DNA from: Chiloscyllium plagiosum | Taxonomy: Eukaryota | Direction of reading: 5' to 3' | DNA length: 64,000 nt | Assembly (NCBI RefSeq): GCF_004010195.1 | Contig: NC_057746.1 | Span: 9,375,183 to 9,439,182 of the forward strand | In this document: in pieces, positions 22,383 through 61,975 of the stretch | Position numbering within the stretch: position 1 is the first letter of the stretch | Layout: every line of letters starts with the position of its first letter | Notes under the pieces: model-generated | Databases searched by the model: none | Told to the model about the DNA's origin: nothing | The model's input: only the letters and a program-made list of their open reading frames with translations | Translations under genes and position numbers: made by a program

Positions 22383-22876
22383 NNNNNNNNNNNNNNNNNN
22401 NNNNNNNNNNNNNNNNNNNNNNNNNNNNNNNNNNNNNNNNNNNNNNNNNNNNNNNNNNNNNNNNNNNNNNNNNNNNNNNNNNNNNNNNNNNNNNNNNNNN
22501 NNNNNNNNNNNNNNNNNNNNNNNNNNNNNNNNNNNNNNNNNNNNNNNNNNNNNNNNNNNNNNNNNNNNNNNNNNNNNNNNNNNNNNNNNNNNNNNNNNNN
22601 NNNNNNNNNNNNNNNNNNNNNNNNNNNNNNNNNNNNNNNNNNNNNNNNNNNNNNNNNNNNNNNNNNNNNNNNNNNNNNNNNNNNNNNNNNNNNNNNNNNN
22701 NNNNNNNNNNNNNNNNNNNNNNNNNNNNNNNNNNNNNNNNNNNNNNNNNNNNNNNNNNNNNNNNNNNNNNNNNNNNNNNNNNNNNNNNNNNNNNNNNNNN
22801 NNNNNNNNNNNNNNNNNNNNNNNNNNNNNNNNNNNNNNNNNNNNNNNNNNNNNNNNNNNNNNNNNNNNNNNNNNNN
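22383..22876. other. Assembly gap
   Basis: N run. Confidence 1.
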
Positions 22877-42136: not shown

Positions 42137-42188
42137 ATGCTGCTTGTTACTTTACTGCACGTTTACTGTGTGTTCATAGTCTCCTCAG
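42137..42188 (+). CDS. MHC class I heavy chain, exon 1 (signal peptide MLLVTLLHVYCVFIVSS)
   Basis: acaacATG context, 17 hydrophobic codons ending V-S-S, strong phase 1 donor G|gtaagc matching the alpha1 exon. Not in the ORF track. Confidence 0.78.
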
Positions 42189-44654
42189 GTAAGCAGTTCA
42201 AACAGCTGACATATGTGGATAGAATTGAAAGTTACCCCAAGATTTCAGCGTCAAAATATAGCATTGAGAGTCTGTTCAGGCTTTGAATGTTTCATTGTCC
42301 TGGGTGTGTGAATGATCCAGGGCAAGGGTCCTCTCTGTACCAGGAGTAAGAGAATTGCTGCCAGAAGTTGTGATAAAGATTCGTTTGCTAAGCTCAGGAT
42401 CCGGGCAGCTGTTTGTGGAGATATATCTATTGTCAATGAAGTCTTAGAGCTGTAACTTGGAATTCGAATGAAAAGAAGTGAAGGTGAGGGGAGGGGAGAA
42501 TAATTGGGAATGCTAATGGAATTTAAAGGGAGGAATGACATTATGAAGGAAACGGAGAGAAAATGTAAAATGGCAAGGTCAGGGAAAGGAACTCTGCACC
42601 ACACTTGGGTGATGTTTTAAGGAATGTTTTACTCATGCCAAGGTCAAGGTCAGCATCTGAACCTGAACTGAGGAACAGAAGTGAAACCAACCCACAATTG
42701 TGGCATTGAAGTGGGGGTGGCAGGAAAGGGAGGGGGGGGGGTGGGAGATGGTGGAAGTAGAGGGATGGGCCATTTCGGCTGAAGGGAGGGGCAAGGTTGG
42801 CTTGCATTTCAGCAGCAGCTAAAGTGCAGTGAGTTCTTTTTATGAGTGAACGTTATTCCTTTGGCTCTGACCTTCGCCGGTTCTCGGGAAGATAGTCATT
42901 GACTATGTTGAAGGCAGAAGTCAACAGGTTTCTAGATATTCTTGACATCAAAGGATATGAGATAATCTTGGGCAAATGATGTCAAAGTCGAAGATGAGCC
43001 TGAATCTGGAATTGAGGGGCTGCTCCTTCCATTTTCCATTCCACATTTTGCTTCCTACCAATTTGCTGCTTCTGGTGGTGAGGGTGGAGGAGATCTGCCA
43101 CAAACATGAGTGATGATGTGACAATGCAGAAACGGAATGCATAAATGGGTCATTGTTTGTTTTGCAGGAGGTGACCGATGGTGTCCCATGAGGCTCTGTG
43201 CTGGAGCTTTGACTGTTCCCTTTTGACATAGATGAGGGGAATGCAGGCACGGTAGCTCAATTTTCAAGTGACACAAAGCTAAGTAAGAAAGAATGCTGTG
43301 AAGAAAGCACAAGGAGCAGACTCTTCCCAGCCCCTGAACGATGCAGGGAAGTAGGGGAAATTGCAGCAGATGGCCAGCAAGCAGCATATCAACATCAAGA
43401 GCAACAGGTTCCACTTTCCAACGAAGTGTTTAAGATTGAATGGTGAGAGGTCTACTCACTACCACCTCACTATTAGTTAAATTCACTTCAATATTACCCA
43501 GTTTCCCACTCTCCCATTTGATGGACAGAAACTGAATGATGTTAACTAATTTCTAACTAATCTGATTTAATGCAGTCAGATGCACCCTAAGTACAGTGAC
43601 AAGTTTTGCTTTGCTAGCAGTACAAGCAGATCATAGCAAACAAGGGCATGCAAATCATAGGATGCTAAGACAGAGCGGGGCATACAGGAGGTGCACAATT
43701 CCAAACACAAAAGTCAGAACCGTTTTTTAGCAGCTCCAGCTAGCTGCTAACTCCTCTGGATGTCTGTCTTGGACACACTTGATAGGCATCAAGTGCATGG
43801 ACCCCCATCTGCAGAATTTGATATCAAACTTGTATGAGCCTCACTGCACCCTCATGATCCATCTCTGATCCACTAATAGAATTTCTCTGCACTTTAGTCT
43901 TGCACCTTTAATTGGAAGGTAACTGCAAGGACACATTGGGTGCAGGGATAGCACCCAGCACATGGACTGGACCGGGCTGCATCTTGGGGTTTGCTCAGTT
44001 GTTCTCTGAGTACTCATTGATTTTGTGTCTACTTTGATGCCTTGCCTTGCATTATTGCATTTCACATTGTAACAGCACCTTTGAATGGCCCAGTTCTGCT
44101 CCTATGTCTCATCTGAGATATGGGGTATACATGTTACTGCACAGCACTGTGCTATGTCAGTTTCACAGCTACAGCATACAGCAGCAGATTTCACAGCAAA
44201 CTTACTCCGAGTGCTTGAATCAAATGGCTGTGCCTCAAAGTTTAAAGGGAGTAGTCCTCAGACATGTCAAAGTTGGTGCTGGGAGCTGTCTGCTCACAGC
44301 TCAGAGGCTTGGGCATGGTCAGCCATCTGTTTGCGGCAGTCAGGATCAGGGGGTCTGTCTCGCCATAGTTCAGAGAGGAAATAATGGGCAGTCCGCAGGT
44401 GGATGTCAGGGGATTCATTGGAAGGCAGCTGGGGAGTTTATCAGAGATTAGTCAGAGTCAGGTCAATCATCATTTGGGGCTGTTCCTCCACATTGACAAG
44501 GGCAGTAGGCCACTGTCAGTCCTTGAGGTCAATGGAATGAAAATGAAGGGAACACTTGGAAAGTGGGACAACTCAATACTGGGGATTGGACGCAAGTGGG
44601 CAAGCTTGGCGAAGGGAGGAATTTGGAAATATAAGCATTTGGATATTTAAACAT

Positions 44655-44957
44655 CAATTACTTACAGTATGGAAACAGGCCCTTCAGCCCAACAAGTCCA
44701 CACCGACCCTCTGAAGAGCAACCCACCCAGACCCATTCCCCTATATTTAGCCCTTCGTCTAACACTACGGGAAATTGAGCATAGCCAATTCACTTAACCG
44801 GCACATTTTTGGACTGTAGGAGGAAACCAGAGCAAACCCACGCAGATATGGGGAGAATGTGCAAACTTCACACAGACAGTTACCTGAGGCGGGTATTGAA
44901 CCCAGGTCTCTGGTGCTGTGAGGCAACAGTGCTAACCACTGTGCCACCGTGCTGCCC
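44655..44957 (-). mobile_element. HE1/V-SINE-type SINE
   Basis: Near full-length reverse copy. Confidence 0.88.
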
Positions 44958-46289
44958 AAATGTGCAATGAAGTGTTCGCAGTGCCTTGCTACGTGCAAGG
45001 TAAAGGAGATACCCTAGACTGTCAGCCATTGACCAGTTGCAAAGCTAGGCTACAAAGATGTTAAATGTCATGGACCCCGAGATATCCTGGCAGTGGCAAA
45101 TACTTCGGCTTATGGTGAGTGGGAGCATAGAATGAGTTGGGTGCCATAAGGATATGGTGCAGAGTTAATGATGTGAGTTTGGGACAATAGCTGTATCACT
45201 CACAAAGCAATATTTTCACTGCATATGTTTGAAAATAATAAACCAAATCAAAATCAAAACCTACTCAGCTCTTGGAGTGTCTACCTAAAATGACACTTAG
45301 CCAATTTCAAATAAGATTCAGCCCAAGGAGATTGCAGACAGTTACAAATAGTTTGAGTGAGCAGGTACAAATCTGGAAGAAGGAGTATATCATCGGAAAA
45401 TACGAAATTGTTCACTTTGGCAGGAAGAATAAGAAAGCAGGGTATCACTAAAGCAGAGAGCAACTACAGAATTCTGAGGCATGGAGTGATCTCAATGTTC
45501 TTATGTATGACTCACAGAAAGTTAATATACAAGTACAGCACCTAATCAGGCAGGTTAATGCAGACTATTCATGATTACAAAATAAATTAAATATAAATGC
45601 TCTGCTTCAGGTATACAAAGCTTTTTGGTGAGACCGTATCTCAAATACTGTGCGCTGTTTACTTAAGGAAGGATGTAAATACATTGGAGAGGTGTTTTAC
45701 TACATTGATACCTTGAATGAGTGGCTTGTCCAATGAGGATAGATTGGAGAGGGTAGGCTTATGTTGACTGGATATTTGCATATATTGTGGGAAATGGTGT
45801 TCTTCCTCCTCCGCAACACCCCAATCCTTCCCAAAATTCACCACTTCCTTAGAACTGATTTAAGGACTGATTTTGCTCTCCTTTTCAAGCCCGCACAGGC
45901 CTCTGTCCTTGCCATCTCTCCAGTCTCATGTCCCTACTTACTATTTTCTCTGCTCCTACTCTGTGTTATGCTTACCCACCCATCTCTATTAACTATGTCC
46001 TAGTGGTTATTCCTTCAGTCTGTCATGTCCCTGCCCTTTATCAATGCATCTGCCCTAAGTCTTCCTTCCTTCTGGAAAAAAAATTCTTGGATCTTCTTGT
46101 GTGTGATTGTCCTTTTGTGGTTTCCTTTCTGTATCTCTGCATACACAAAGAATGGTGTATTAATGTGACCTGTTGCATGCAGTAAAAACCTGTCTCCCTT
46201 GAGCCTGTTACACCACTCAATTATAGTTTAGCAGATCTTAACTGTGTGTAGTCACCTTGGTCCCATAGCTCTCAAAGAGGCACATCAGG

Positions 46290-46930
46290 CAGTAAAGAAG
46301 GCAACTAGTATGTCGGCCTTCATAGCGAGAATATACAGGAGCAGTGATGCCTTTCTGCAATTGTACAGGGTTGGTGAGACCACACCTGAAGAGTATTATG
46401 AGTAGTTTTCTGTTTCCTTATCTGAGGAAGGATATTCTGGCTCTGGTGGGAATGTAACAGGAGATTTACCAGTCTGATTCCCAGGATGGCAGGACTGATA
46501 TATTAAGAGAGATTGGATTGGAAAGGACTACATTCACTGAAGTTTAGAAGACTGAGGGAGATCTCTTAGAAAGCTACAAAATTCTAATAGAACCAGACAG
46601 GGCAAATGCAGGAATGTTCCTAATGACTGGGCAGTACAGACCGAGGCGTCACAGTCTAGAGATAAGGGATTAGAACTGAGATGAGGAGAAATGTTTTCAT
46701 CCAGAGAGTGGTGAGCTTTTGGAATTTTCTGCTGCAGAAGGTGCTGGAGACCAAAGTATTGAATGTTTTTAAGAAGGAGCTAGATATATTTCTTCAGGTG
46801 TAAGGGATCAAAGGGTATGGGAAAGAAGTGGAAAGAAGGAACTGAGTTGGATGATCAGCCATAATCATATTGAATGCAGCACAGGCTTCAAAATTCAAAT
46901 GGCCTACTCCTGCTTCCATTTTCATGTAAA
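46290..46930 (+). mobile_element. CR1 3' fragment
   Basis: ttggtgagaccacacctg...tggcctactcctgct tail. Confidence 0.8.
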
Positions 46931-47964
46931 CTCCTCGCATAGCAGAATTCTTGCAATCTGTTCCCAAACATGTCAGTGGCCCTCCAGCTTCAATTGTTTT
47001 TGCAGGGAATGAGTTGCAGATTTCTAGTCTCCTCGGCATGAAGTGCTTTCTAACATCATTGGTGCCTCATTCAGGGCTCACTCTCCAGAGAAAATTTCTT
47101 GATATTTGATCATTAAACGTGGGCCTCACTGGAAAAAAAAATGCGACATTTATTGTCCGCCACTATTCATTTCATCGATCCAACCTATCAAATTCTTAAT
47201 CATTAAGATTTCGGAACCCCACACTCTTCACTATTGAAGGGAAACTTATTCTAATCTGTACAAGTCAGTCTCATATTTCAAAGTTCTGAACTCTGGAGTC
47301 AAATCACTTCACAAAAGAAATGAAGTTTTCCACAAGACACCAGTGATTAGACAGCAGACTATTTCAATGGCTGTGGGGCCTTTCAGGATGTCTTGAGGTT
47401 GGGTGAGGTCCAATGCAAATGTGAATTACTTCTGAACCTCCTCCTTCTACATTAGCAGGACGACACTGATGTTGGTGCAGATTCTAATATTGTCCTTTGC
47501 TTCATTCTCCTGCTCACAGAAACACAATGAACTTTGGAACTGCCTAATCTGTTGCTTCAGCCCAAGATCTTTTTTTCATGTCTGAGCAAATACTGTAGTT
47601 TATTGCAATCTCTGAATGAGTCAAGGCCAAAACGAACTTGTGTTTCTGCTTATACGGAGAATTAGGTGCTGAACTGATGATCCCTCAAGCACTGTCAAAG
47701 TTAACTTATCTTAAAGCATATTTTTAATAAATTGGCCTATATTGGACAATGTCAGAGTGATATCTTAACTGTCTGACTTATATGTACATATTTTGACATA
47801 ATTTATTTTAAATTTGGGCTCTACATTTTTAGTTAGTAACCTCTCTTTTTTCTGTGTCTGAAGTTATTAATTAACTTACATTTCTGGAGCCATGTTGTGA
47901 ACTCCATTGGTAGCCTAAGTGCTTTCTGTTTACTTTAGAAGCTTATAATCTATTAAATTGGGCA

Positions 47965-48150
47965 GATTAGATTAGATTAAATTCCCTACAGTAGGGAAAC
48001 AAGCTCTTCGGCCCAACAAGTCCCTATCGACCCTCCAAAGAGTAACCCACCCAGACCCATTCCACTATCCTATATTTACCTCTGACTAAAGCACCAAACA
48101 CTATGGGCAACTTAGCATGGCCAATTCATCTGACCCGCACATCTTTGGAT
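47965..48150 (-). mobile_element. SINE 3' fragment
   Basis: (attag)n tail plus 3' half of HE1-type SINE. Confidence 0.8.
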
Positions 48151-49274
48151 GGGCAATTGTACCTCAAAACTTAAGTTTGAAATATATGGATTTTGTTTTT
48201 GTTTTCAGGTGATCAGAAACCTAACTTCGAGGGAGATTTTCGGTCTCAATTTTAGTTTGAATGGGGAAGTTTGATAAAGTCGTTAGATAGAGATGGTTAC
48301 AAAAAGCAGTGTTCCTTCAAAAGGGGAGAGTATGATGAAACCAGATTACGATACAAGCAGTGAGTTAGTGATAATCCTAAAAATGAAGAGGCGACTTGAC
48401 TACATTTCAGTGTATGTTAGCTCCAGGGAGAAGCTATCAATGTTTTTAATCGAGGAGTTATGTTAGTTACCTTAAATCTATTGAAGTGTTAGGAGAAGGG
48501 CGTCTTTTATGAGAACTGTACCACGGTTGCTGTTCTACAAGGTAACTGTTTTTTTGAAATTTAGGAGTGTCTTAGGATTAATGGGGTAATTCTTTTACTG
48601 TGTGTTTAAAAGGCTCAATTTGTTTTATAAGTAAATAGATTAGTTGGCTTATTCCATTTTGCTTTCATTTCTTTAGCTTAATAAACCTCCATTCTATTGC
48701 TACAACAAATTATGCAACATTTCATGTTTCTGTCTTTATGAGAGACCACTGCAGTTACCCAAAAATGAAGCAAAAATATGATCTATCAAGCCATAACATG
48801 GACTGGGATCCGACTGGTCAAATAATAACATCAACTAGCTTCATCTATGGGAGGAGAATCATACATTTAGAATTTTCTGACATGGATGTCCGGTTTCCAT
48901 TGCAAGAGAAGGCAGGAAATCCTGGCTTCCATATTGCTCTGTTTTAATGTAAATGCTCCAAATCCAACCCTTTGTTCTCTTTGAAGATGCTGATTAGTTT
49001 CGACACTCTGGTTACTGATTCAGCAAGCATTGAGAGGAGTTCATTTCCTATACCAACACATTGATAGTTCACACATTTCGAGCAGATCCTCTCAACCTTC
49101 TCTGTCTCACTGAAAATAATCCGTCCACCTTCACTGCTCCAGCCTCTATGCTCAGGAATGACCTGGGCAAAAATCTACCACAGCCTTTCAATCACAACCT
49201 TGCTATCCTCCTTGACGTGCAAGGTTCAGAATGATCAAGTTTTCAAACCATGCTCTTTGGAAATCTTTGTAAGA

Positions 49275-49510
49275 GGGCGACTGTCTGTGTGGAGTTTGCA
49301 CATTCTCCCCGTGTCTGCATGGGTTTCCTCCCACAGTCCAAAGATGCACAGGTTAGGTGAATTGGCCATGCTAAATACCCCTTAGTGGTAGGTGCATTAG
49401 TCGGGGGTAAATGTAGGGGAATGGGTCTAGATGGGTTGCTCTTTGGAGGGTCGGTGTGGACTTGTTGGGCTGAAGGTCCTGTTTCCACACTGCAGGGAAT
49501 CGAATCTAAT
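49275..49510 (+). mobile_element. 5'-truncated HE1-type SINE
   Basis: Central domain and tail present. Confidence 0.85.
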
Positions 49511-49737
49511 CAAATACTGTGGAGTAGGTTGAAGGAAATCACACGAGATGGGGATCCAGTGGAAAATTAGATCAAGGGAGAATATGATCCATGATGTTAT
49601 TGATTAGCAAGCAGTCTGAGGGGGAATCTGGCTTATTCCTGCTTTTATTCTTTATGTTCAAGTTGAACATTAATCTGTGGCATACTCACAGCCAGTTCTT
49701 TTACAAACAATGGTGTTTCCTCTCTGTGATCCTTCAG

Positions 49738-49998
49738 ATTTTCACATCCTCACATTTTACTATGTGCTGAGCCTTGGCCAGGCTGAGCTGCCTGAGTACA
49801 GTTTGGTGGCGATGCTAGATGACCACCACATAGTCTATTTCGACAGCACCCTGGAGTGGTGTGTACCCAGACAGCAATGGATGGCACAGTCCTTCCCAAA
49901 GGATCACTGGACTATGATGACTATCACCATGGCAGGATTACATGGTCTCGTCAAAGGGAACATTGAGATATTTTACCAACAACACCGCGGAGGTTCTG
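49738..49998 (+). CDS. MHC class I heavy chain, exon 2 (alpha1 domain)
   Basis: Acceptor ccttcag, donor G|gtaggt, 261 nt, phase 1/1. DFHILTFYY...LPEYSLVAMLDD..IVYFDS...VPRQQWM...HW fits the class I alpha1 pattern. Confidence 0.95.
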
Positions 49999-50404
49999 GT
50001 AGGTGTTTTCACAACAATGGCGAAATAACATTGTATTGAGACAGTATCATAGTAATATCCTGAACTGTTACACACTTGATACCTGACGTGGAATTAGCTG
50101 GATGTTGTCACTTTCTGTAATACAGAAGGCATTAGTGCACAGCAAAATCAATGAAGTGGTTCACTTGCTTCTACTTGCGTGTGTTGAGGGAGAAATGAAA
50201 CTGGCAGAATTTCTGGTCGCTTGTGTGAGCAGAGAGAACCTTGATTTAAGTAATCAAAATGATGGCGTTTCTGACAAAGCAACACACACAGTACTGACCT
50301 TCAGACAGTGAAGCAATCTTCAGTACTCCATGTCAAAACATGCAACACTCATGCAGTACTTTACTGTTGTTCTGAAGTTGCACCTTTCCCGAGTATCGTT
50401 CAGT

Positions 50405-51058
50405 TCACAGTACAGCACTCCCTCAGTACTGACCCTCTGACAGTGCGGCACTCCCTCATTACTGACCCCCTGACAGTGCGGCAATCCCTCAGTACTGGCC
50501 CCCTGACAGTGCAGCACTCCCTCAGTACTGACCCTCTGACAGTGCGGTACTCCCTCAGTACTGACCCTCTGACAGTGCAACACTCATTCAATACTGACCC
50601 TGTGACAGTGCAGCACTCCCTCAGTACTGACCCCCTAACAGTGCGGTACTCCCTCAGTACTGACCCTGTGACAGTGCAGCATCCCTCAGTACTGACCCTC
50701 TGACAGTGCAACACTCCCTCAGTACTGACCCTCTGACAGTGCGGCACTCCCTCAGTACTGACACTCTGACAGTGCAGCATTCCCTCAGTACTGACCCTCT
50801 GACAGTGCGGTCATCCCTCAGTACTGACCCTCTGACCGTGCGGTAATCCCTCAGTCCTGACCCTCTGACAGTGCAGTACTCCCTCAGTACTGGCCCTCTG
50901 ATAGTGCAGCATTCCCTCAGTACTGATTGTCTGACAGTGCGGTATTCCCTCACTACTGATCCTCTGACAGTGCGGTATCCCCTCAGTACTGACCCTCTGA
51001 CAGTGCGGTACTCCCTCAGTACTGACCCTCTGACAGTGTGGCACTCCCTCATTGCTGA
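50405..51058. repeat. 33-bp minisatellite (cactccctcagtactgaccctctgacagtgc(a/g)g)
   Basis: About 20 units; explains ORFs 50308-51155. Confidence 0.95.
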
Positions 51059-51707
51059 TCTTCCATTGAGCAATAACTTGAAAAACTAACCCGCTGATGA
51101 CGCAGTGCTCACAATGCTGCCAGGCTGACATACCACTTTGGTGTGGTGGTAGCACCAGCTTAATGTCATTTGAGATTTATGCAATGGTCACAAAAAAACC
51201 TTGCCAAGATTTGCGGGTGTTGCAGGAGACCACAATGGTTCATATATCACTGGGCACTGCTAACCTTTGAGATATGCCATTTCCTTTTCTAATACAGCAA
51301 TTCACAATCGCCGAACAGTGCATCAGGTTGACTTAGAGATCAATAATACTTTGTGGTCAGATGTACCTAACTCGTAGATCTGTTGGACCAAACAACCTGT
51401 TTCATTGTTGTAAATACTAAATCACTTCCAGCTATGATAAGAGTCCAGTACCACAGAACATTTTTTAAAACTTGTTTTTGGGATGGATATTGGCGCTATC
51501 AGTATTTATTGCCCATCCTTGTCCATCCATTATTGCCTGTGAGAAGGTGGTAAACCATGTGAATGCAATCTCAATTGACATCTGTTTTGGAATGTAAGAG
51601 CTGAATAAGACCTTCCAGCCTTTCAAACCTAATCCACCACTTGAGTAGGTCCACCACTTGCTCTTGACACTCTTGACTTCACTTCCTATTGTTTGATACC
51701 CTTACTC

Positions 51708-51801
51708 ATTCCTGATGAAGGGCTTATGCCCGCAATGTCAATTCTCCTGCTCTTCAGATGCCACCTGACTTGCTGTGCTTTTCCAGCACCACACTCTCGA
51801 C
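51708..51801 (+). mobile_element. Solo Penelope terminal repeat, hammerhead core mutated (GAAA>GCAA)
   Basis: cctgatgaagggcttatgcccgcaatgtc. Confidence 0.72.
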
Positions 51802-52457
51802 CCTGACTGAACATAATTATTTCAGTCTCAGCGTTCGAATATCCAAATGACCTCCAATTAGGAGAAGCAATTTGTGTTTCAGTTAACATTTATGTTTCAG
51901 GTTAGTTTGCTCCAAACCAACTTCACCTCACCCCTTATCAACAGACCCACTGATTCCTTCCTTCTTCTTGTATTTATCTATTATAATGTACACCTACTCG
52001 TCATTTCCCAATTGTTATGGACTTCAGCTTCTAAACCCTAATTGGATTTAACAGAGAGAATCTCAATGAAGAGAAAGAGAGAGCTTCACCCTCGGATGCA
52101 TCCTTTTCATGAGAAACTGCATTCTGGTTTCAGTCCTTGGTGACCTGGTTCGAATTTTGATCTGACACCCCTTACCCTTGAGTGTCCCACCAGAGGAAGT
52201 AACTTCTCTGGAATTACTTGCATGAAGCTGTCCACCTTGGCCAATCTTCACCTCTATCCCCTCCTTTGAGACATCGCTGGAAACTGACTTCTTTACAAAA
52301 TGTGTCCCCAACATCCCCTGTGGAGTTTAGGTTGGAAAATCTCAATAAATGATGCTCCTGAAGTGTTAAAATGGCTGCAGCAATATAAGCTGTGATTGCA
52401 TCCAGCTTGCAGAACCTTTTTCACATTGCGAATTGATTTGAATGATATTCTCTCCAG

Positions 52458-52733
52458 GCCTGTTCTTCGTCCAGGGAATGTGTGGCTGTGAATTGCACAG
52501 TGATAATTCCACCGATGGGTTTATAAAGCTGGGGTACAATGGGCAAGATGCATTTGTTTTCGATAAGGATGCAATGAGTTGGATCGCATTCAATCCAGAG
52601 TTCCAGGCGTTAGCAGACCGGTTGAATCTCCACACCTTCATGAATAAATACTTCAAGACTCTGTTGGAAAAGGACTGTGTGAAATGGCTGCAGATATACC
52701 TTGAATTTGGACGGGCAGCACTGCAGAGGAGAG
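52458..52733 (+). CDS. MHC class I heavy chain, exon 3 (alpha2 domain)
   Basis: Acceptor ttctctccag, donor G|gtatgg, 276 nt. QGMCGCEL...GYNGQD...SW...LEKDCVKWLQIYLEFGRAALQR, with the canonical C101/C164 pair. Confidence 0.97.
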
Positions 52734-54446
52734 GTATGGTTCACGATTAGTGTCTCAAGTGAAAACAGTGACAATGCCTCACATGCAATTCGTAGACCTC
52801 CTTTCTCATGCATTTTGTTCATGATAGATGTTTCAACATTTCTCAATATCTAATTATTGAGCCCCCAACTCCAACAATTCTTTGTATCTGATCTTTAACA
52901 GGAAGCAACAACACTTGGGCCATGCCTTGCTCTTTCTTGGTAAAGACACAACCCAATTCTGCATTTTTCCTTCAATTCACAATAAAAGCTAGCAGAAATC
53001 ATGCTCTCATTTGTAATTGGTTTCATCTCCAATCTGAAAAGGACTTCTTCCACATACTAGTCCCACTGCTAGAATTATTTTGTTGTGTAATTGAATCCAA
53101 ATGTCACCATCTTCCACAGTGGGATATGAACCTGGGTTCTCTTGGGCATCAGCCTGTAGCTCTGGGTAACTAGGCCAGTAGCATTACTGCTGTGCCCACC
53201 ATCTCCTCGTAAGGAAGATGGGTAGTGATTGTTAGGGGTCAGGCATCTCAACTCCAGAACATGTCTGCAGGAGTTCCTCAGGGGAGATAGTTCCTTAACC
53301 AGCCTACTCAGGGATGTTATTTACACACCTCTGGGGGGGGGGGGGGAGGAGGGGTGGGAGGAGGGACTGGAAATTTGACCTCCTGGCTCAGCAGGAGGGA
53401 CACTACCACAGCAACACAAGGACCCACCTGTTAGTCTGTCTTTTCATCAAATATTCAGAGATGTTATTACACACTGATTGCATAGGTGGGACTTGAATCC
53501 AGGACCTCTAGGCACACTATCACTGCACCATAAGAGCCCCTTTGTCCCTCTTTAATTTATTTATTTTATTCAGTTCTGCTTTCATCCAGAAGTGTTGTTG
53601 CACGCAGCTGAACTTAGTTTTCTTTCCCATCTCAATACCATCTGTGAGCCACCAGCAGAAAATTGTCTCTTTCCAATTGATTAATTTACCCGGTAAGCCC
53701 ATTGAGGGCAATGCGATCTGTCAAGGAGAGGGATAGATAGTGGAGAGTGGTGGTGGGGCTAAATTAAAATTGACTTGGAAGTGCAACTAAAGCATTGTAG
53801 CCTCTGCAGTGCCCACTTCTCTCTAAGGGCATCGAGAGGGTTGATGGACACTGTGTTCTCTGTCTCTGATGACACCTGGGAGCAGCAGTCAGCACAGATG
53901 ATCCCTCTGCCCATGTTTATAGCCAGCCCAGCCAGTCCCAGGAGAGGACACACAAGGATGTTCCCTGATCTGCCCATGCCATCCCAATCAGGTGCCCAAA
54001 GACCACGGGCATATGCCACTCCTTTATAGCTCGCCAGTCGTCTTGCTATGTTAGCAATGATGATAATAGGGCTGTTGCAGTGTAATGTTTGTGTCTCTAC
54101 ATCAGGGCCCTAAGGTTTGGGATCACATCCCACCTTCTCTGAAGATGTGCATTAAAATCTCTTAACACGTTCTCCAGAAGATATCTCTGATGGCTGCCTT
54201 ATATATTAGCAATGAAGATAATACTGCCTTTCTGTCCTTTTGAAAGCTGAAAAAAAGGTGGGTGGCAAACATCAACTTTATTATGGAATGAGCAATGTAT
54301 TATCACAGTCAATTGATTCTTAATTATTCATTATTAGGTATTGGGCAAGCTTCCAATTTCGGTACCCAGTGCACACTTCATACTATGGCGATGAAGGAAT
54401 GTGATAAAATGGACACTTGCCCCATTTTATGTGCCCTTCCAACCCA

Positions 54447-54760
54447 ATGGCGGCATGGTGGCTCAGTGGTTAGCACTGCTGCCTCACAGTGCCTGGGCAG
54501 TCTAGACTTGGCCGACAGTCTGTGCAGAGTTTGCACGTTCTCCCTGTGTCTGCGTGGGTTTCCACCAGGTGCTCCGATTTCCTCACCTAAACCAAAGATG
54601 TGCAGGTCAGGTGGATTGCTTATGGTAGTGTCCAGGGATGTGCAGGCTAGATGGATCAGCTATGGGAAATGCAGGTTCAGATTGATAGGTCTGTTAGGGT
54701 GCTCTTTGAAGGGTCAGTGTGAACTCGATGAGCTGAATGTTCTGTTTCCACACTATATGA
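54447..54760 (+). mobile_element. Older HE1/V-SINE-type SINE
   Basis: Head and central domain present. Confidence 0.8.
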
Positions 54761-55282
54761 GGTCTATTGCATTATTTGATGGAAATACGCCCGGCAGGGG
54801 CACGTATAATGTAGCCCAGCTTCTGGATGACTACTGTGTCAAGTCCCTTCATAATTCTGAAGCCCTTTAGATTATCCTCTCGCCTTCCTCTTTCATGACC
54901 TTCATTTGTCAGCATTAGTCCCATGCCTTCATAGAGGCCTGGAAACAGAAAATAGGAAATCAGGAGTTGGCTCCACAATTCAGTATAGTCATGGCTGATT
55001 ACCAGCATAGTACAATGTTCATGCTTTTGCCTTTTTCCCTAAGAAATATAACTAATGCCTTCTTGAAAACTTTCAATGTTTTGACATCAAACGCTTGCTG
55101 TGGCAACGAATTTCACAGGCCCACCAATTTCTGAGTGACATTTCTGCTCACCTACCTGGCCTACCTGACATCCTTAAACTGTGCCCTGTCCGATCTGAGG
55201 TTGCTGATAATTTTAAAGAGAATTTGTCACAAGTATGCAAATGAAATCCTGCAGATGCCAGGACTCTAGTGGCAGACTAAGG

Positions 55283-55625
55283 TGAGGCAATGGCCTAGTG
55301 GTATTGTCACTGGATTGCTCATCCAAAGACCCAGCTAACATCCTAGGGACCTAGCTTCAAATCTCACCGTTGCAGATGGTGGAACTGGTATTCCATTTTT
55401 AAAAATCAGGAATTATGAATTTAATGATGATGATGGTTGATTGTTGAAAAAACCCATTTGGTTCACTAAAGTCCTTTAGGGAAGGAAACTGCCATCCTTA
55501 CTTGGCCTAATGTACATATGACTCCAGACTCACCACAATGTGGTAGACTCTTAACTGCCCTTGGGGCAATGAGGGATGGGCCATAAATGCTGTGTAGCCA
55601 GTGATGCTCTCACCATGCGAATGTA
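55283..55625 (+). mobile_element. Second, tRNA-headed SINE family (related fragment at 63240-63420)
   Basis: tggcctagtgg head; gtcctttagggaagg / gactcttaactgccct core shared between the two copies. Confidence 0.65.
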
Positions 55626-55766
55626 CAAAGAGAAAAGAAGTCTGAAAGAAAAGGGGAAGAGCCCGACAATTCTGCTTTGTAAACCCGGAGAGAGGAAAGC
55701 AGAGTTTAGATTGTCGGTTAGCAATCTTTTTGATCAGTGATTTTAGTCTTTGTTTAACTCTCTCAG

Positions 55767-56039
55767 TCATCCCTGAGGTGTTCATTAGCAGCAGGACTGA
55801 CGGTGAGCGAGTGCTGAAACTCTCCTGCCTTGTGACAGGCTTTTATCCTGGGGCTATCGAGGTGACGTGGCTAAGGAATGAAGTGGTGGTCCTTGAAGTT
55901 GAATCCAGTGACGTGCTTCCCCACCAGGATGAAACATATCGGGTGACAAAGACAATGGAGGTCAGTCGAGATGGTGGGGAGAGGTACTCCTGCCATGTTG
56001 AGCATGCCAGCCTCATGCGGGAGCTCAATGTACCCTGGG
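55767..56039 (+). CDS. MHC class I heavy chain, exon 4 (alpha3, Ig C1-set domain)
   Basis: Acceptor ctctctcag, donor G|gtaagt, 273 nt. LSCLVTGFYP..IEVTW...LPHQDETY...YSCHVEHASL...PW. Confidence 0.97.
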
Positions 56040-56239
56040 GTAAGTAACAAGTTGAAGGGATGCAGATATCTTCCTCTAGGCCTGGGTTATCAGTCTAATT
56101 CAGAGGGGTATTAACTTATCTCATCTGTCATGGTCAGTGACACTGAGATTATTTTCTAAAAGATGTGAGACCAGTCAAGTTGATTGGTCTTACCAGACCA
56201 CGGGGTTGCTCTCATTAGTGAGAGAGAGAGAGATAACTG

Positions 56240-57015
56240 ATGAGATGCAAGGTATTGAATTTTGGGAAAACAAATAGGGGCAGAATGTATTCGGTTAAAA
56301 GTAGGGCCTTGGTAGAGTGGTAGCATTGAGAAAGCTAATGGTTTAGGTACATAATTCTTTGAAATTTGCAGCACAGGTAGGTAGGGTGGTTAAGAAGGCA
56401 TTTAGCATGCGTGCCTTCATTGCTCAGACCTTTTGAGTACAGGAGTTGGGATGTCATGTTGAGGTTGTACAGGGTGTTGGTGAGGCCTCTTCTGAAGTAC
56501 TGTGTCCAGTTCTGGTCTTGCTGCAACAGGAAGGATATTATTAAGCTGGAGGGGCTTAAGAAAAGATTTACCGAGATGTTGTTAGGAATGGAGAGTTTGA
56601 GTTATAAGGAGAGGCTGGAACCTTTTTCACTGGAGCATAGGACGTTGTGGGGTGACCTTATGGAGGTTGATAAAATCATGAGGGGTACAGACGAGGTGAA
56701 TGGCAGGTGTCTTTTCTCTGGGGTGGGGGATTTTCAAAATGGGGTGCATATTTTTAAGGTGAGAGGAGAAAAATTAAAAAGACATGGCAATTTTTTTTAC
56801 ATTGAGAGCAGTTCGTGTGTGAAATGAACTTCCAGAGGAAGTGGTGAATGCTGGTACAGTTACAACATTTAAAACATGTTTGGATAAGTACATGAATAAG
56901 AAATATTTGGAGGGTTATGGGCCACACACATGTAGATGGGACAATTCAGTTTGAGATTATCATCAGCATGGACTGGTTGGACTGAAGGTGTCTGTTTCCA
57001 TGCTGTATGACTCCA
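56240..57015 (+). mobile_element. CR1 3' fragment
   Basis: ORF 56411..56827 LVRPLLKYCVQFWS...GDLMEVDKIMRG. Confidence 0.9.
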
Positions 57016-57437
57016 TGGGGGTGATTTAACCTGAGGGCCACCATGCCTCCGATGGTGGGAGAAGTTGAGAAGGACCATCCTTCATGATCACCTCATCTTG
57101 TGTGGGAATGGAACCCAGGCTGTTGGCATCATACTGCTTTGTGAATCAGCCATCCAGCCAACTGACCCCCATCAGACCATTAAATGTTACTATTCAGGAG
57201 GATTTGAATATCTCTGTTGACAGGGAGAAATAACAGTAGGGGTATAGTACTTGAGCCTGCATTACTATTCAGTGACTGATCACTGAATATTATTATTAGG
57301 CATTTATTTCTTTTGAAATAACTCCACAGGGGCTAGTATGATGGTACCAAGTCATTTATTTACACATGGAGGGGCTTTGACACTGATCCAGCTTCGCAGA
57401 GCCAGCTCTCTGAGTGAACAGAATCCCTGACACTCCT

Positions 57438-59361
57438 CTTTTTATTTTTTTACTGCTAACCACCACACTACCGCCAAACTGCGGTTATGCTTTTTTTTTT
57501 CCCCAGCACCCATGTTGTGTGTGTGCAGATGTGAGACACAGTGAGAGACACAAGGTGCACGAATCTTTATTCAATTTTCACCACCGGGAAGATCGGAAAA
57601 CACCCGGGTGGCCAGTGACAAGCACTGCCCTTCACAAAAGGCAATGCTGTGTGATCAAACAGTGAAGGGGAGGGTAGGGATTAAATACTACTGTTTTTTT
57701 CCTTTTTCTTTTTTTTCTTCTTTTTTTTATAACCCCCACACTACCGCCTAACCGCGGTAGTGCTTATTTTTTCCCCAGCACCCATGGTGTGTGTGTGCAG
57801 GTGTGAGACACAGTGAGAGACACAAGGTGCACGAATCTTTATTCAATTTCCACCACCAGGAAGAAAGGAAAACACCCAAGTGGCGACACTCCTGTTTATT
57901 TTTTTAATTTTTTTTTGTGACCAGTGACAAGCAGTGCCTTTACACTCTTTTTTTAAAAAATTAAATTAACCCCCACACTACCACCTAACTGCGGTAGTGC
58001 TTATTGTTTCCCCAGCACCCATGTTGTGTGTGTGTGCAGGTGTGAGACACAGTGAAAGACACAAGGTGCACAAATTTTTATTCAATTTCCACCACCAGGA
58101 GGATAGCAAAACACCCAAGTGGCCAGTGACAAGCACTGCCCTTCACATCAAAGGGCAATGCTGTGTGATCTCCTGCTAATTTTTTTTTTTATTAAACCCC
58201 CCCACACTACCGCCTAACCGCGGTAGTGCTTATTTTATCCCCAGCACCCATGGTGTGTGTGTGTGCAGGTGTGAGACACAGTGAAAGACACAAAGTGCAC
58301 AAATCTTTATTCAATTTCCACCACCAGGAAGATAGGAAAACCCGAGTGGCGACACTCCTGTTTATTTATTTATTTATTTTTTTCCTGTTTATATTTATAT
58401 TTTATTAAACAAATTACAAACAAACAGTTTACAAAAAACATTTACAGCTGTACATAAGAGACAGCAATGTTACAAGGGAGAGGAGCAGCAAAGCTAGGCC
58501 CCAAACCCTACCATTCAACCATTTTACAGGGAGATGAGGACAANNNNNNNNNNNNNNNNNNNNNNNNNNNNNNNNNNNNNNNNNNNNNNNNNNNNNNNNN
58601 NNNNNNNNNNNNNNNNNNNNNNNNNNNNNNNNNNNNNNNNNNNNNNNNNNNNNNNNNNNNNNNNNNNNNNNNNNNNNNNNNNNNNNNNNNNNNNNNNNNN
58701 NNNNNNNNNNNNNNNNNNNNNNNNNNNNNNNNNNNNNNNNNNNNNNNNNNNNNNNNNNNNNNNNNNNNNNNNNNNNNNNNNNNNNNNNNNNNNNNNNNNN
58801 NNNNNNNNNNNGGAAGCTTTTTATTTTCTTTTTTTTTTGCTTATTTTATCCCCAGCACCCATGGTGTGTGTGTGCAGGTGTGAGACACAGTGAAAGACAC
58901 AAAGTGCACCAATCTTTATTCAATTTCCACCACCAGGAAGATAGGAAAACCTGAGTGGCGACACTCCTGTTTATTTTTTTATTTTTTTTCTTTCTCTTTT
59001 TTTTTTCTCCTCAAATCCCAGTTCCACGTGTGACAAGACAGTGACAATGACATTTATACATTAGACATACAAAAGTGCAGACAATACAGACCCAGCAAGC
59101 CCCCGCCCCTCCCCTGTTTATTTTGTCTCTTTTTTTTTACTAAAGTGCAGACAATACAGACCCAGCAAGCCCCCGCCCCTCCCCTGTTTATTTTTTTTTC
59201 TTTTTTTTTTACCCCCACACTACCGCCTAAGTGCGGTAGTGCTTATTTTATCCCCAGCACCCATGGTGTGTGTGTGCAGGTGTGAGACACAGTGAAAGAC
59301 ACAAAGTGCACCAATCTTTATTCAATTTCCACCACCAGGAAGATAGGAAAACCTGAGTGGC
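57438..59361 (-). mobile_element. Array of at least 6 co-oriented polyA-tailed retroposon 3' ends plus other tailed fragments, inserted at GACACTCCTGTTTA
   Basis: Units at ~57460, 57732, 57968, 58196, 58839 and 59211 share a 3' end (AATAAA; cactaccgc/gcggtagtg hairpin in most units; T-run on the + strand) and differ in 5' extent. The target motif recurs between units. Confidence 0.8.
58544..58811. other. Assembly gap
   Basis: N run. Confidence 1.
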
Positions 59362-60971
59362 GACACTCCTGTTTATATCTGTCAGCCAGGGCTTCCTGAT
59401 TGGACCAAATCAACAGCCCCAATCAGGGAAGTCATATTCTATGATGTCCACCTGCCTGACCTCATTCCAATCGTTACATCTTTGGCTGACAAAAATCTGT
59501 CAGTGAAATATTTTCAAATTACAAGTTATCGTGGCATCAACGGCTGTTCACAGAAGAGACTTCCAAACTTCTTTCAAGCCCAACTTACTGAAGGTAAAGC
59601 CATGTTATACACAGCGCAAGACCAATTTATCCTTCTCTTGATGTGGTGCCCAAAACTTAATTTGCTGTCTCACCACTTCTTCTCCCAGAGCAAGGTCAGA
59701 GTGTGGAATTCCCTTCTCCAGAAGGTAGTAGAAACTGGGCCTTTAATTTCTTTTCCAGGCTGACTTAGATAGATGTTTGGTGGACATGGAAGTAAAGCCT
59801 GATGGGGTGCAGACAGGAAAGCAGAGAAGAGATCACAGCCATGATTTTCCTGAATTCCAGAGCAGACTTGAAGGACCAAGTAGTATACTCCTACTCTTAT
59901 GTCCTACGTCTGTATCTCGCTATGACTGATCAGACCATAGAACAGATATTTGTCCCATTGTGATTGTGTTGTTTCTAAATTAATACCAAATTAATTCCAC
60001 TCCCTTCCTGAAACCCTGTATCAATCCAAAACAAATCCTAGTCTTCTGTTCTCTCCCTGTGACTCTGTATCAATCCCCAAATATATTCAACTTGTCTGCT
60101 CTCTATCCATACCACTGCATTAATTACCATGTCACTGTCACACTGTCTTCCCATAACTGTGGACGAATCAAATTCCAGTCTCCTGGCTCTGCCAATAACT
60201 GTTGCAGGAATTTCCAGGATCTGGTAGCAGCCCTAGTAGCCTCTGACTCTTGCCTGCAGTGAGTGACCAGACAGGGATCTATAGAATGTGAAAATGGCCT
60301 TTGTGACTGAGCTTTTGCGAGGGATTCCAGAGTATACAAAAAATGAAATGTTGGAGACCCCAAATCACAGAAGCAGGCATACTCTCGGATTTTGTAACAA
60401 GAAATTAGCACATACTAATTAAGAGGTATAGTTACTGAAGTTGAATAATTACTGTTGATTAGGTGTACATCATACATAGAGTAGTAGTACAATTAGCCAG
60501 TCACTATGTAGGTCTGTCTATCAAATTGTAATGTATGGCTAGTGGAAAGGCACTATATTATCAGATCAGAGGACACTGTAGGCTCCAATTTGTCTTTCCA
60601 TAATGATTCATCTCTGACCTGTGTATATCAATTACCTTACCCTGTTTGATTCCTTGGATGTTTTAATGACTTATTTCAAGGCTCAGAGTTTCAACGAATA
60701 AGCAACTTTTGGTTTGACTGTGACATTATCAGTATTGTCCTTTTGCTGTCATGCAAAAAAAAAGTTGGCTCCAAGAACAAATGGTCCCATGTATTTTTTA
60801 ACTAACAGTTTTGTCTCCTTGTGAGTTTTCTGCAGCTAGATGTTTACAACTGTGCTCCTCAAATATTGTTCTGCAAGTTCGTTTCTTAAATTATTATGTT
60901 TTCAACCCTTTCAATAACCCTATGTTAATCCCATTAAGTTATTGCCCCATTTTTTGCCCATAGTTATAAAG

Positions 60972-61285
60972 TCGTAGAATCATTGAGATGTATAGCAAGA
61001 AAACAGACCCTTCGGTCCACCTCATCCATGCTGACTGGATATCCCAACCCAATCTAGACCCACCTGCCAGCACCCGGCCCATATCCCTCCAAACCCCTCG
61101 TATTCATATACACATCCTGATCCTTTTAAATGTTGCAATTGTACCAGCCTCCACCACTTCCTCAGCCAGCTCATTCCATACCCGTACCACCCTCTGTGTG
61201 AAAAAGGTACCCCTTAGGTCTCTTTTATATCTTTCCCCTTTCACCCCAAACCTTTTGCCCTCTAGTTCTGGACTCCCCCACCCCA
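60972..61285 (-). mobile_element. CR1 3' fragment
   Basis: gtaccagcctccaccacttcctc...tagttctggactcccc. Confidence 0.8.
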
Positions 61286-61469
61286 GCCTGTACGAAGCCC
61301 AACGTTAATTCCACATTCTTGAAAGGTAATACATAAATTCAAATGTTCTTTCTCTAATATGTGATACTGCAAGTATAGCATTAGTTTGAAGTTCATTGAA
61401 GTACACTGATTTCATTTTAAAATTATTGTTTATTCATGCCATTTTAATGTAAACTGTATGTGTCAGCAG

Positions 61470-61624
61470 AGCGTATGTCAGATGGAGGCATTAAATTGGA
61501 AACGATGATTCGAGCAACAGCTATCTCGCTCACTCTTCTTGTGATCATCATTGGAATTGGTTTCTGGAGGAAGAGATGGGGTGATCAGCCTGACAGTGAC
61601 AAGCAGGTGCACTCAGAGCACTAG
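61470..61624 (+). CDS. MHC class I heavy chain, exon 5 (connecting peptide, TM, cytoplasmic tail, stop): ERMSDGGIKLETMIRATAISLTLLVIIIGIGFWRKRWGDQPDSDKQVHSEH*
   Basis: tgtcagcag NAGNAG acceptor (start 61467 or 61470); phase 1 fits the alpha3 donor; hydrophobic stretch followed by an RKR stop-transfer; TAG at 61622-61624. Not in the ORF track. Confidence 0.85.
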
Positions 61625-61969
61625 AGACTATCAGAGAGCAGAAGAGCCAAACGGATAACAGCAAACACCAGCAGAGACTGGCAGAGACCAGCAGAGGATA
61701 TCAGATATGATCAGAGACCAGCAGCTGGCCAGAATTCACTTCCCACATTTCCTTGAACCTCTGGGCCCATGACTGGCATTGATGCCAACATGGGCATGTT
61801 TGGTGTCACAGAATGGAAGGAGCTCGGATCCTCCTGATAGAATAATTCCAGCTTCTCATAATGATCTATAGGGAGGCTGGTCCTCCCCCTGGTCTAGAGC
61901 TGGGTTCAGTTCCAGTTACTAAATTTAAAGATTAACGGTAGCAGTGGAATTTTGCATAAAAAGGAACAG

Positions 61970-61975
61970 AATAAA
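61970..61975 (+). terminator. Candidate polyadenylation signal of the MHC class I gene
   Basis: First AATAAA I found after the stop, ~345 nt downstream. Confidence 0.45.

What the first reader, a model, noticed from the sequence alone, without database searches (positions are those of the whole stretch)
42137..61624. Intact non-classical MHC class I gene with a hydrophobic, anchor-less groove (candidate lipid-presenting, CD1-like shark lineage)
Seen: five phase-1 exons splice into an open ~338-aa class I heavy chain. By eye against HLA-A2 numbering, the peptide-terminus anchors are mostly replaced (Y7>F, Y59>H, Y/R84>I or F, Y123>A, T143>L, K146>R, W147>L, Y159>L); only Y171 is kept. The alpha1 helix (WTMMTITMAGLHGLVKGNIEIF) and floor strands (ILTFYYVL, LFFVQGMC, FIKLGY, AFVF) are unusually apolar. 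Structural and beta2m-contact residues Q96, G120, D122, C101/C164 and P235 are retained. Known: classical class I keeps these anchors, whereas CD1/PROCR-type molecules lose them and have hydrophobic grooves; sharks have several non-classical lineages (UBA-UFA). Inference: a beta2m-associated molecule binding lipids or another hydrophobic ligand. It may belong to a described hydrophobic-groove lineage (I recall UFA being reported so) or be new; I cannot tell from sequence alone.
Basis: partly seen in the sequence, partly recalled or inferred. Interest (0 to 1): 0.85.

Follow-up and report, generated by a model that had tools for sequence, protein, structure and literature searches.

The report
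Shark non-classical MHC class I gene
This is an intact bamboo-shark gene for a non-classical MHC class I protein with an unusually greasy binding groove; it belongs to an old shark-and-ray lineage next to the UGA lineage, so it is a real and testable lead but not a new kind of gene.

Summary
Five phase-1 exons with AG/GT at every junction give 338 codons plus a stop. Exons 2-5 are exact substrings of Chiloscyllium plagiosum RefSeq XP_043533871.1, named 'MHC class I-related gene protein-like'.

The N gap lies in intron 4, inside a repeat array. No coding exon is expected there.

The gene belongs to a clade of 15 proteins from 15 shark and ray species with full support. That clade is sister to UGA (PDB 9CH4) and distinct from UFA (PDB 8GM8).

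By elimination and from memory it is probably the published UDA lineage. I could not check this, because the papers are not held.

Its groove columns are the most apolar of all shark class I clades sampled. Its alpha1 and alpha2 domains are better conserved than alpha3.

A hydrophobic non-peptide ligand is plausible but unproven. No RNA evidence was obtained.

The scan also holds an unchecked note of another hydrophobic-groove class I gene about 308 kb upstream in this genome.

The parts
42137..42188 (+). Exon 1: start codon and a 17-residue hydrophobic leader plus the first base of a split codon
   Evidence: ATG with A at -3 and a GT donor at 42189. 14 of 17 residues are identical to the leaders of the Heptranchias and Pristiophorus orthologues. 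RefSeq does not use this exon for this species.
49738..49998 (+). Exon 2: alpha1 domain (87 codons, phase 1)
   Evidence: AG acceptor and GT donor. Pfam MHC_I E 8.6e-5. Best PDB sequence match is 9CH4 at 7.3e-21. Exact substring of P0215.
52458..52733 (+). Exon 3: alpha2 domain (92 codons). It carries the C101/C164-equivalent pair, an extra invariant floor cysteine and an invariant N-x-T sequon.
   Evidence: AG/GT junctions. Pfam MHC_I E 3.4e-16. Invariant columns in the 15 orthologues.
55767..56039 (+). Exon 4: alpha3 Ig C1-set domain (91 codons)
   Evidence: AG/GT junctions. Pfam C1-set E 2.4e-18.
61470..61624 (+). Exon 5: connecting peptide, transmembrane helix, 18-residue cytoplasmic tail and stop codon. 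An alternative acceptor lies 3 nt upstream at 61467.
   Evidence: Tandem AG acceptors. The AlphaFold2 model has a helix at residues 295-316 of P0215. No YxxPhi motif in the tail.
61970..61975 (+). AATAAA, a candidate polyadenylation signal about 350 nt after the stop
   Evidence: Read by eye. Its use was not tested.
61617..61658 (+). Out-of-frame remnant of the longer tail end that close relatives encode
   Evidence: The +1 frame translates to 13 residues plus a stop. 12 of the 13 residues match the C-termini of the Hemiscyllium and C. punctatum orthologues. This implies a 2-nt loss in this assembly.
58544..58811 (.). Assembly gap, inside intron 4 and inside a repeat array (57437-59352)
   Evidence: N run. 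Six copies of a 165-nt repeat around it. The letters were not filled or looked up.
21108..21132 (+). The first coding exon used by the RefSeq models (8 codons plus 1 base), which encodes no signal peptide
   Evidence: Found by six-frame search with the first 8 residues of P0215. It is followed by GTAAGT.

Best explanation
Shown:
- The locus is an intact five-exon gene of Chiloscyllium plagiosum for a membrane-anchored MHC class I heavy chain.
- It belongs to a conserved lineage found in 15 sharks and rays. That lineage is the sister of UGA and is distinct from UFA and from classical class I.
- The lineage has replaced 7 of the 9 residues that hold peptide ends in all 12 rows, and 8 of 9 in the orectolobiform rows such as this gene.
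- Its groove-lining columns are the most apolar of the clades sampled.
- Its alpha1 and alpha2 domains are better conserved than its alpha3 domain.

Inferred:
- The protein pairs with beta2-microglobulin.
- It holds one conserved hydrophobic non-peptide ligand, lipid-like, in a groove that cannot clamp peptide termini.
- It displays that ligand at the cell surface to a semi-invariant receptor.
- It has no tyrosine sorting motif, so it probably loads in the secretory pathway or at the surface rather than in endosomes. That differs from UGA and from CD1b-d.
For: Gene anatomy and identity to RefSeq.

Clade:
- 15 of 15 rows form one clade, SH-aLRT 100.
- 14 of 14 rows form one clade, support 100/100.
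- The internal branching splits batoids from sharks, so the lineage predates that split.
- Its union with UGA has support 94 and 88/77.
- The union of this pair with UFA has support 97/91.

Nearest solved chain, 9CH4 'shark nonclassical MHC class I, UGA':
- phmmer E 1.5e-64.
- Foldseek TM 0.85, rmsd 3.1.
- VIA Z 26.9, 268 residues aligned.

Groove and conservation:
- Anchor table and hydropathy: mean KD 1.27 (range 1.01-1.44, 12 rows). The others are UFA-like 0.99, UGA-like 0.36, Callorhinchus 0.35, classical-like 0.32 and multicopy 0.19. The apolar fraction is 0.67 against 0.48-0.57.
- Small residues (Gly at 97, 69 and 76; Ala at 123) sit among them in 12/12 rows, which leaves room.
- Mean pairwise identity by domain is alpha1 0.76, alpha2 0.78, alpha3 0.67 over 66 pairs. 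In the multicopy shark clade it is 0.49, 0.69, 0.86.

Literature: a review states that crystal structures and mass spectrometry suggest UFA and UGA bind lipids (PMC12562908, passages).
Against: - No ligand, no expression data and no groove geometry were obtained.
- The model tool gives no coordinates, so a groove filled by its own bulky side chains is not excluded.
- The groove column list is recalled from HLA-A2 pocket lists and was mapped by hand through one classical-like reference of unnamed origin (P0034).
- Groove columns are not significantly more invariant than other alpha1/alpha2 columns: 27/44 against 60/134, Fisher p 0.08.
- UGA, the reported lipid binder, scores no more apolar than classical-like chains on the same measure (0.36 against 0.32). 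The measure is therefore a weak predictor of lipid binding.
- By sequence the protein is closer to MR1 (E about 1e-50) and to classical chains (1e-45 to 1e-38) than to CD1.
- The fold ranking beyond 9CH4 is flat, with Z 24.3-25.4 for classical, YF1, MR1 and CD1-1.
- RefSeq models for this species start at a different first exon that has no signal peptide.
Confidence: 0.5

Rival explanations
1. It binds peptides or lipopeptides in an unconventional way, with hydrophobic contacts in place of terminal hydrogen bonds. Chicken YF1*7.1 does this with N-acylated ligands, and some class Ib molecules do it with a narrow peptide set.
For: Chicken YF1*7.1 chains rank second to fourth by VIA (Z 25.2-25.4, rmsd 2.9). 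Their entry titles name N-myristoylated and N-palmitoylated ligands. Y171 and, in 8 of 12 lineage members, W147 are kept.
Against: Seven of the nine terminus anchors are replaced in 12/12 rows. The Z scores of YF1, classical BF2 and MR1 differ by less than 1, so the rank carries no weight.
Confidence: 0.17
2. It is an MR1-like presenter of small polar or aromatic metabolites.
For: MR1 is the best non-shark match by sequence: alpha2 exon E 4.6e-18 and whole protein about 1e-50. NCBI names the lineage MR1-like. The ligand domains are better conserved than alpha3.
Against: The column aligned to the MR1 lysine that forms the Schiff base (residue identity recalled) holds C in the four orectolobiform rows and I, T or A in the others. 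The columns at 9 and 97 hold Y and G, not basic residues. Only 8% of the groove columns are charged.
Confidence: 0.1
3. It carries no ligand. The apolar side chains fill the groove, and the molecule acts as a receptor ligand or in another role, as FcRn, HFE, ZAG or MIC do.
For: Many bulky L, I, M and F residues occupy groove columns. No groove volume could be computed here.
Against: Glycines at three groove columns and alanines at two are invariant. The predicted helices have the usual lengths and high confidence. The sister lineage is reported to hold lipids.
Confidence: 0.15
4. In this species the gene is decaying or silent: the tail is truncated, and the annotated transcripts start at an exon without a signal peptide.
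For: A 2-nt loss shortens the tail by 12 residues relative to Hemiscyllium and C. punctatum. RefSeq isoforms X1 and X2 lack a leader, and X2 also lacks 23 residues of alpha3. No RNA run on record holds the stretch.
Against: All five exons are open with consensus splice sites. Identity to Hemiscyllium is 92-97% in every domain. The leader exon is conserved. The loss may be an assembly error.
Confidence: 0.06

Closest known systems
Shark UGA (PDB 9CH4, 'Crystal structure of shark nonclassical MHC CLASS I, UGA')
   Same: UGA is the nearest relative and sister clade. Both are present in sharks and rays and lie on the same scaffolds in several species. Both have lost T143, Y159 and Y123 and have Gly at 97.
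   Different: Identity is only 39-41%. UGA mostly keeps Y7, Y59, K146, W147 and Y171, whereas this lineage keeps only Y171 throughout. UGA tails carry YxxPhi in 12 of 19 proteins, this lineage in 0 of 16. This lineage has an extra invariant floor cysteine where UGA has Phe.
Shark UFA (PDB 8GM8, 'Crystal structure of shark nonclassical MHC CLASS I, UFA')
   Same: UFA is a low-copy elasmobranch class Ib lineage with an apolar groove. It falls on the same side of a well-supported branch (97/91) as this lineage plus UGA.
   Different: It is a separate, very long-branched clade. Identity is alpha1 0.33 and alpha2 0.20. 8GM8 is not among the 60 best PDB sequences for the whole protein.
UDA lineage of cartilaginous fish (Almeida et al. 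2020, J Immunol; not held, recalled)
   Same: As I recall it, UDA is single-copy in elasmobranchs, MHC-linked and old, with the invariant anchor residues replaced by more hydrophobic ones. A review lists UDA, UFA and UGA as the single-copy class Ib genes (PMC12562908). This lineage is neither UFA nor UGA.
   Different: No UDA sequence or text could be seen. The identity rests on elimination and on memory. The Callorhinchus clade does not join this lineage in my trees.
MR1
   Same: MR1 is the best match outside cartilaginous fish. Both show ligand domains better conserved than alpha3.
   Different: The ligand-capturing lysine column and the basic contact columns are not kept. No orthology is shown.
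CD1
   Same: Both have an apolar groove without peptide-end anchors. Function may be analogous.
   Different: The sequences are distant. Full-length CD1 chains are absent from the best 60. CD1 fusions appear only through the Ig domain. Chicken CD1-1 ties with many others at Z 24.4. There is no tyrosine sorting motif. Pocket depth could not be tested.

Membership tests
MHC class I heavy chain | alpha1/alpha2 platform domain | tested here: met
   Pfam MHC_I: alpha2 exon 3.4e-16, alpha1 exon 8.6e-5. AlphaFold2 model has mean pLDDT 84.5 with the expected strands and helices.
MHC class I heavy chain | Membrane-proximal Ig C1-set domain with its cysteine pair, then a transmembrane segment | tested here: met
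   C1-set 2.4e-18. Invariant cysteines in the orthologue alignment. Helix at 295-316.
MHC class I heavy chain | Association with beta2-microglobulin | not testable with these tools
   Only conservation of the Q96, G120, D122 and P235 equivalents was seen.
Classical (peptide-presenting) class I | Nine conserved residues that bind the peptide termini | tested here: not met
   Only Y171 is kept in 12/12 rows. W147 is kept in 8/12, but not in this gene.
Classical (peptide-presenting) class I | Ligand domains more variable than alpha3 | tested here: not met
   Between species, identity is alpha1 0.76 and alpha2 0.78 against alpha3 0.67. Polymorphism within the species was not testable.
UFA | Clusters with the UFA reference (8GM8) | tested here: not met
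   The 8GM8 relatives form their own clade with support 100. 8GM8 is identified as UFA by its entry title.
UGA | Clusters inside the clade of the UGA reference (9CH4) | tested here: not met
   The two are sister clades, each with support 100/100. Each contains both sharks and batoids.
UGA | Membrane-proximal Tyr-x-x-hydrophobic motif in the tail (a feature seen here, not a published definition) | tested here: not met
   0 of 16 in this lineage against 12 of 19 in UGA.
UDA | Identity with a UDA reference sequence | not testable with these tools
   The papers are not held. No protein returned carries the name.
UDA | Single copy, with anchors replaced by more hydrophobic residues (recalled description) | tested here: inconclusive
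   There is one copy in the window and one 90%-identity cluster in 13 of the 15 species; Leucoraja and Pristiophorus each have a second, partial protein. Heptranchias has 11 near-identical entries on several contigs. The anchor pattern fits.
CD1 | Sequence membership of the CD1 family | tested here: not met
   No full-length CD1 match among the best 60 PDB sequences.
CD1 | Deep hydrophobic A' and F' pockets | not testable with these tools
   No coordinates are returned. The sequence proxy is apolar.
MR1 | Lysine that forms a Schiff base with the ligand | tested here: not met
   The aligned column holds C here and I, T or A elsewhere in the lineage. That this MR1 lysine is the Schiff-base residue is recalled.

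The most novel reading that the evidence does not exclude
This lineage could be a third and most hydrophobic member of an ancient UFA/UGA-type group. In this reading its invariant, unpaired cysteine on the groove floor (the position-99 equivalent, two residues before the disulfide cysteine, so facing the groove by strand alternation) captures ligands through a thiol bond. That would be a sulphur counterpart of the lysine capture used by MR1. In bamboo and zebra sharks a second cysteine sits in the column aligned to that MR1 lysine.
Probability: 0.08. Interest if true: 0.8.

Novelty: new member of a known kind. Interest (0 to 1): 0.4.

Why it matters
Sharks and rays are the oldest animals with an MHC. 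It is still debated when presentation of lipids and other non-peptides arose.

My trees place this lineage with UGA and UFA, the two shark molecules reported to bind lipids. By sequence its groove is the most apolar of the three.

If it also carries a hydrophobic ligand, early jawed vertebrates had a small family of such presenters inside the MHC. The members would differ in trafficking signals.

The practical value here is modest:
- a corrected gene model, with a leader exon that RefSeq misses;
- a clear lineage placement (not UFA, not UGA);
- a short list of invariant groove residues to mutate.

Tried and rejected
RNA evidence:
- The look-up of sequencing runs found no holder on record as RNA.
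Junctions, expression and the 2-nt tail difference therefore stay untested.

I used protein identity by domain instead.

Deep phylogeny against CD1, MR1 and the teleost L and Z lineages:
- The protein searches returned almost only cartilaginous-fish proteins.
- Sequences from memory are barred, so this was not done.
- Ranking against PDB sequences and folds served as a rough substitute. The fold ranks are too flat to separate the families.

Groove volume or collapse: not computable, because the model tool returns no coordinates.

Lineage name:
- Searches for 9CH4 and 8GM8 found 0 papers each.
- Searches for UFA, UGA and UDA terms gave only two papers that mention shark UFA or UGA: PMC10751288 and PMC12562908. 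I read passages of both.
- PMC9586880 and PMC8010645 (passages) added nothing.
- The two J Immunol papers on UDA and UEA are not held.
- Supplementary files were not asked for. Those of PMC10751288 may list the class Ib genes by locus.

Other readings considered:
- A promoter reading of the 500 nt before exon 1 showed nothing I would stand behind.
- An axolotl 'MR1-like' hit is an ordinary classical-like chain.

Rows left out:
- The N-terminally cut orthologues P0145, P0137 and P0139 were left out.
- P0145 was left out.
- Fragments P0146, P0148, P0149 and P0213 were left out of all trees.

Full report
What is there.

The region holds one class I gene on the + strand. The five exons are:
- 42137-42188: leader.
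- 49738-49998: alpha1.
- 52458-52733: alpha2.
- 55767-56039: alpha3.
- 61470-61624: connecting peptide, transmembrane segment and tail.

All junctions are AG...GT and phase 1. The sum is 1017 nt, i.e. 338 residues and a stop. Two AGs in tandem precede exon 5, so a form one alanine longer is possible. A C. punctatum RefSeq model uses the upstream AG. An AATAAA lies about 350 nt after the stop. Pfam scores, exon by exon, are MHC_I 8.6e-5 (alpha1, below the curated cut-off alone), MHC_I 3.4e-16 (alpha2) and C1-set 2.4e-18 (alpha3).

The gap.

The N run 58544-58811 lies in intron 4, in an array of six copies of a 165-nt repeat between 57437 and 59352. In 14 of 15 orthologues the protein passes from the last Trp of alpha3 straight to the Glu-Arg that opens exon 5. 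The phases also fit. The gap therefore does not touch the coding sequence as far as can be judged. Whether the DNA on both sides is contiguous cannot be shown.

Whose gene.

The translations of exons 2-5 are exact substrings of RefSeq XP_043533871.1 (P0215, 329 aa) of Chiloscyllium plagiosum, named 'major histocompatibility complex class I-related gene protein-like isoform X1'. The window is therefore whitespotted bamboo shark, and the gene is already annotated.

The RefSeq models start at another exon, 21108-21132, which has a GTAAGT donor. It encodes eight residues that are not a signal peptide. Isoform X2 also drops 23 residues of alpha3. It shares 14 of 17 residues with the leaders of the Heptranchias and Pristiophorus orthologues.

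I did not build or search the joined five-exon model. Whole-protein work used P0215 by id.

Lineage.

An exhaustive HMMER search with the alpha1 exon found one representative at 70% identity and nothing else above 45%. Word-index searches with that protein and with P0215 gave a set annotated 'MR1-like' in 15 species. The batoids are Leucoraja, Pristis, Mobula and Hypanus. The sharks are Pristiophorus, Heptranchias, two Scyliorhinus, Mustelus, Cetorhinus, Carcharodon, Stegostoma, Hemiscyllium and two Chiloscyllium. Identity to P0215 is 58-95%. The next tier falls to 40-44%.

That next tier is the UGA lineage. PDB 9CH4 is the best solved match: phmmer 1.5e-64, Foldseek TM 0.85, VIA Z 26.9. It is titled 'Crystal structure of shark nonclassical MHC CLASS I, UGA'. 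To place UFA I folded a Cetorhinus protein that matches 8GM8 at 4.3e-90. Foldseek returned 8GM8, titled '... UFA'.

In trees of 76 rows (quick) and 50 rows (careful):
- The window's lineage, UGA and UFA are each one clade with full support.
- The window's lineage joins UGA at 94 (SH-aLRT) and at 88/77.
- That pair joins UFA at 97/91.
- Batoids and sharks separate inside both this lineage and UGA.

UGA genes exist in Stegostoma and C. punctatum as well, so the two lineages are old paralogues that coexist. The gene is thus neither UFA nor UGA.

A 2025 review lists UDA, UFA and UGA as the single-copy shark class Ib genes (PMC12562908, passages). By elimination, and from my memory of the 2020 UDA paper, this lineage is probably UDA. 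That paper is not held and no returned protein bears the name, so this is a lead and not a result.

Groove.

I mapped 44 groove columns onto an alignment of 68 cartilaginous-fish and other class I chains. The list is recalled from HLA-A2 pocket descriptions and was placed by hand through landmarks of one classical-like chain. In 12 full-length members of the lineage the anchor columns read:
- 7 F, 59 H, 84 Q, 123 A, 143 L, 146 R, 159 L and 171 Y, each in 12/12 rows.
- 147 is L in the four orectolobiform rows and W in the other eight.

Mean hydropathy of the 44 columns:

| Clade | Mean Kyte-Doolittle |
|---|---|
| This lineage | 1.27 (range 1.01-1.44) |
| UFA-like | 0.99 |
| UGA-like | 0.36 |
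| Callorhinchus | 0.35 |
| Classical-like | 0.32 |
| Large shark-only multicopy clade | 0.19 |

A caution follows from the table. UGA, the reported lipid binder, is not more apolar than classical-like chains on this measure, so the measure alone does not predict lipid binding.

Glycines at 69, 76 and 97 and alanine at 123 are invariant.

The lineage has five invariant cysteines. Two pairs are the usual disulfides. The fifth sits two residues before the alpha2 disulfide cysteine on the same strand, so it should face the groove. This is inferred from strand alternation. An invariant N-x-T sequon lies in alpha2, while the usual alpha1 sequon is absent.

Conservation.

Across the lineage, mean pairwise identity is alpha1 0.76, alpha2 0.78 and alpha3 0.67 over 66 pairs. 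For shark against batoid pairs it is 0.70, 0.75 and 0.58. The multicopy clade shows the opposite pattern: 0.49, 0.69 and 0.86. Constraint is therefore strongest on the ligand platform, as expected for a conserved ligand or partner. Groove columns are invariant in 27 of 44 cases against 60 of 134 for other platform columns (p 0.08, not significant).

Trafficking.

None of 16 tails in the lineage has a Tyr-x-x-hydrophobic motif. 12 of 19 UGA tails do, 11 of them just after the basic stop-transfer residues. If the lineage binds lipids, it would not sample endosomes the way CD1b-d do. That comparison rests on established knowledge, not on a test here.

What it resembles.

By sequence the order is UGA, then MR1 (about 1e-50), then fish, reptile, bird and mammal classical chains (1e-45 to 1e-38). 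Full-length CD1 is not in the best 60. The column aligned to the ligand-binding lysine of MR1 holds Cys in this gene and I, T or A in other members, so MR1-type capture is not kept. By fold, everything after 9CH4 is tied. This includes chicken YF1*7.1 with acylated ligands, BF2, MR1 and chicken CD1-1, all between Z 24.3 and 25.4.

Verdict.

- The gene is a real, conserved, anchor-less and strongly apolar class Ib gene.
- It is the sister of UGA and not UFA.
- It is most likely the known UDA lineage.
- Lipid or other hydrophobic ligand binding is the best reading at about even odds, and it is untested.

No RNA evidence was obtained.

Noticed in passing
window 61610-61658: Relative to the Hemiscyllium and C. 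punctatum orthologues, this assembly lacks 2 nt after the Ser-Glu codons. The tail therefore ends 12 residues early. The lost tail end is still readable in the +1 frame. This may be a real change or an assembly indel.
   Followed up: partly
window 61464-61471: Tandem AG acceptors 3 nt apart precede exon 5. RefSeq models of two Chiloscyllium species use different ones, which gives proteins with or without one alanine.
   Followed up: partly
window 21108-21132: The RefSeq models begin at a small exon 28.6 kb upstream of exon 2. It has a good donor but no signal peptide. It may be an alternative promoter or an annotation artefact.
   Followed up: partly
window 50300-51160 (intron 2): ORFs on both strands show a long run of an 11-residue peptide repeat, i.e. 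a minisatellite of about 33-nt units filling some 800 nt of intron 2.
   Followed up: no
window 1-740: A long tandem array of about 30-nt units at the very start of the window is open in three frames.
   Followed up: no
window 61650-61730: Just after the stop, the DNA holds repeated units rich in CAGCAGAGAC. In other species (Pristiophorus, Carcharodon) similar units are translated as a repeated tail motif.
   Followed up: no
window 22358-23698 and 34145-34927, minus strand: Reverse-transcriptase-like ORFs of retroelements lie between the upstream gene and the class I gene. One is interrupted by an N gap.
   Followed up: no
proteins P0240, P0286-P0288, P0291-P0295 (UGA lineage): UGA tails end in a conserved acidic-Tyr-x-x-hydrophobic motif in both sharks and rays. 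It resembles the endosomal sorting signal of CD1b-d.
   Followed up: partly
cluster of P0140 (Heptranchias perlo): Eleven near-identical proteins of this lineage are annotated on several contigs of 76-530 kb. The lineage is either multicopy in this species or the assembly holds unmerged haplotypes.
   Followed up: no
cluster of P0009 (Leucoraja erinacea): UGA-like models are fused or clustered with 'GPR139' models. A UGA-like gene and the orthologue of this gene have consecutive accessions on one 127-kb contig, which suggests they are neighbours.
   Followed up: no
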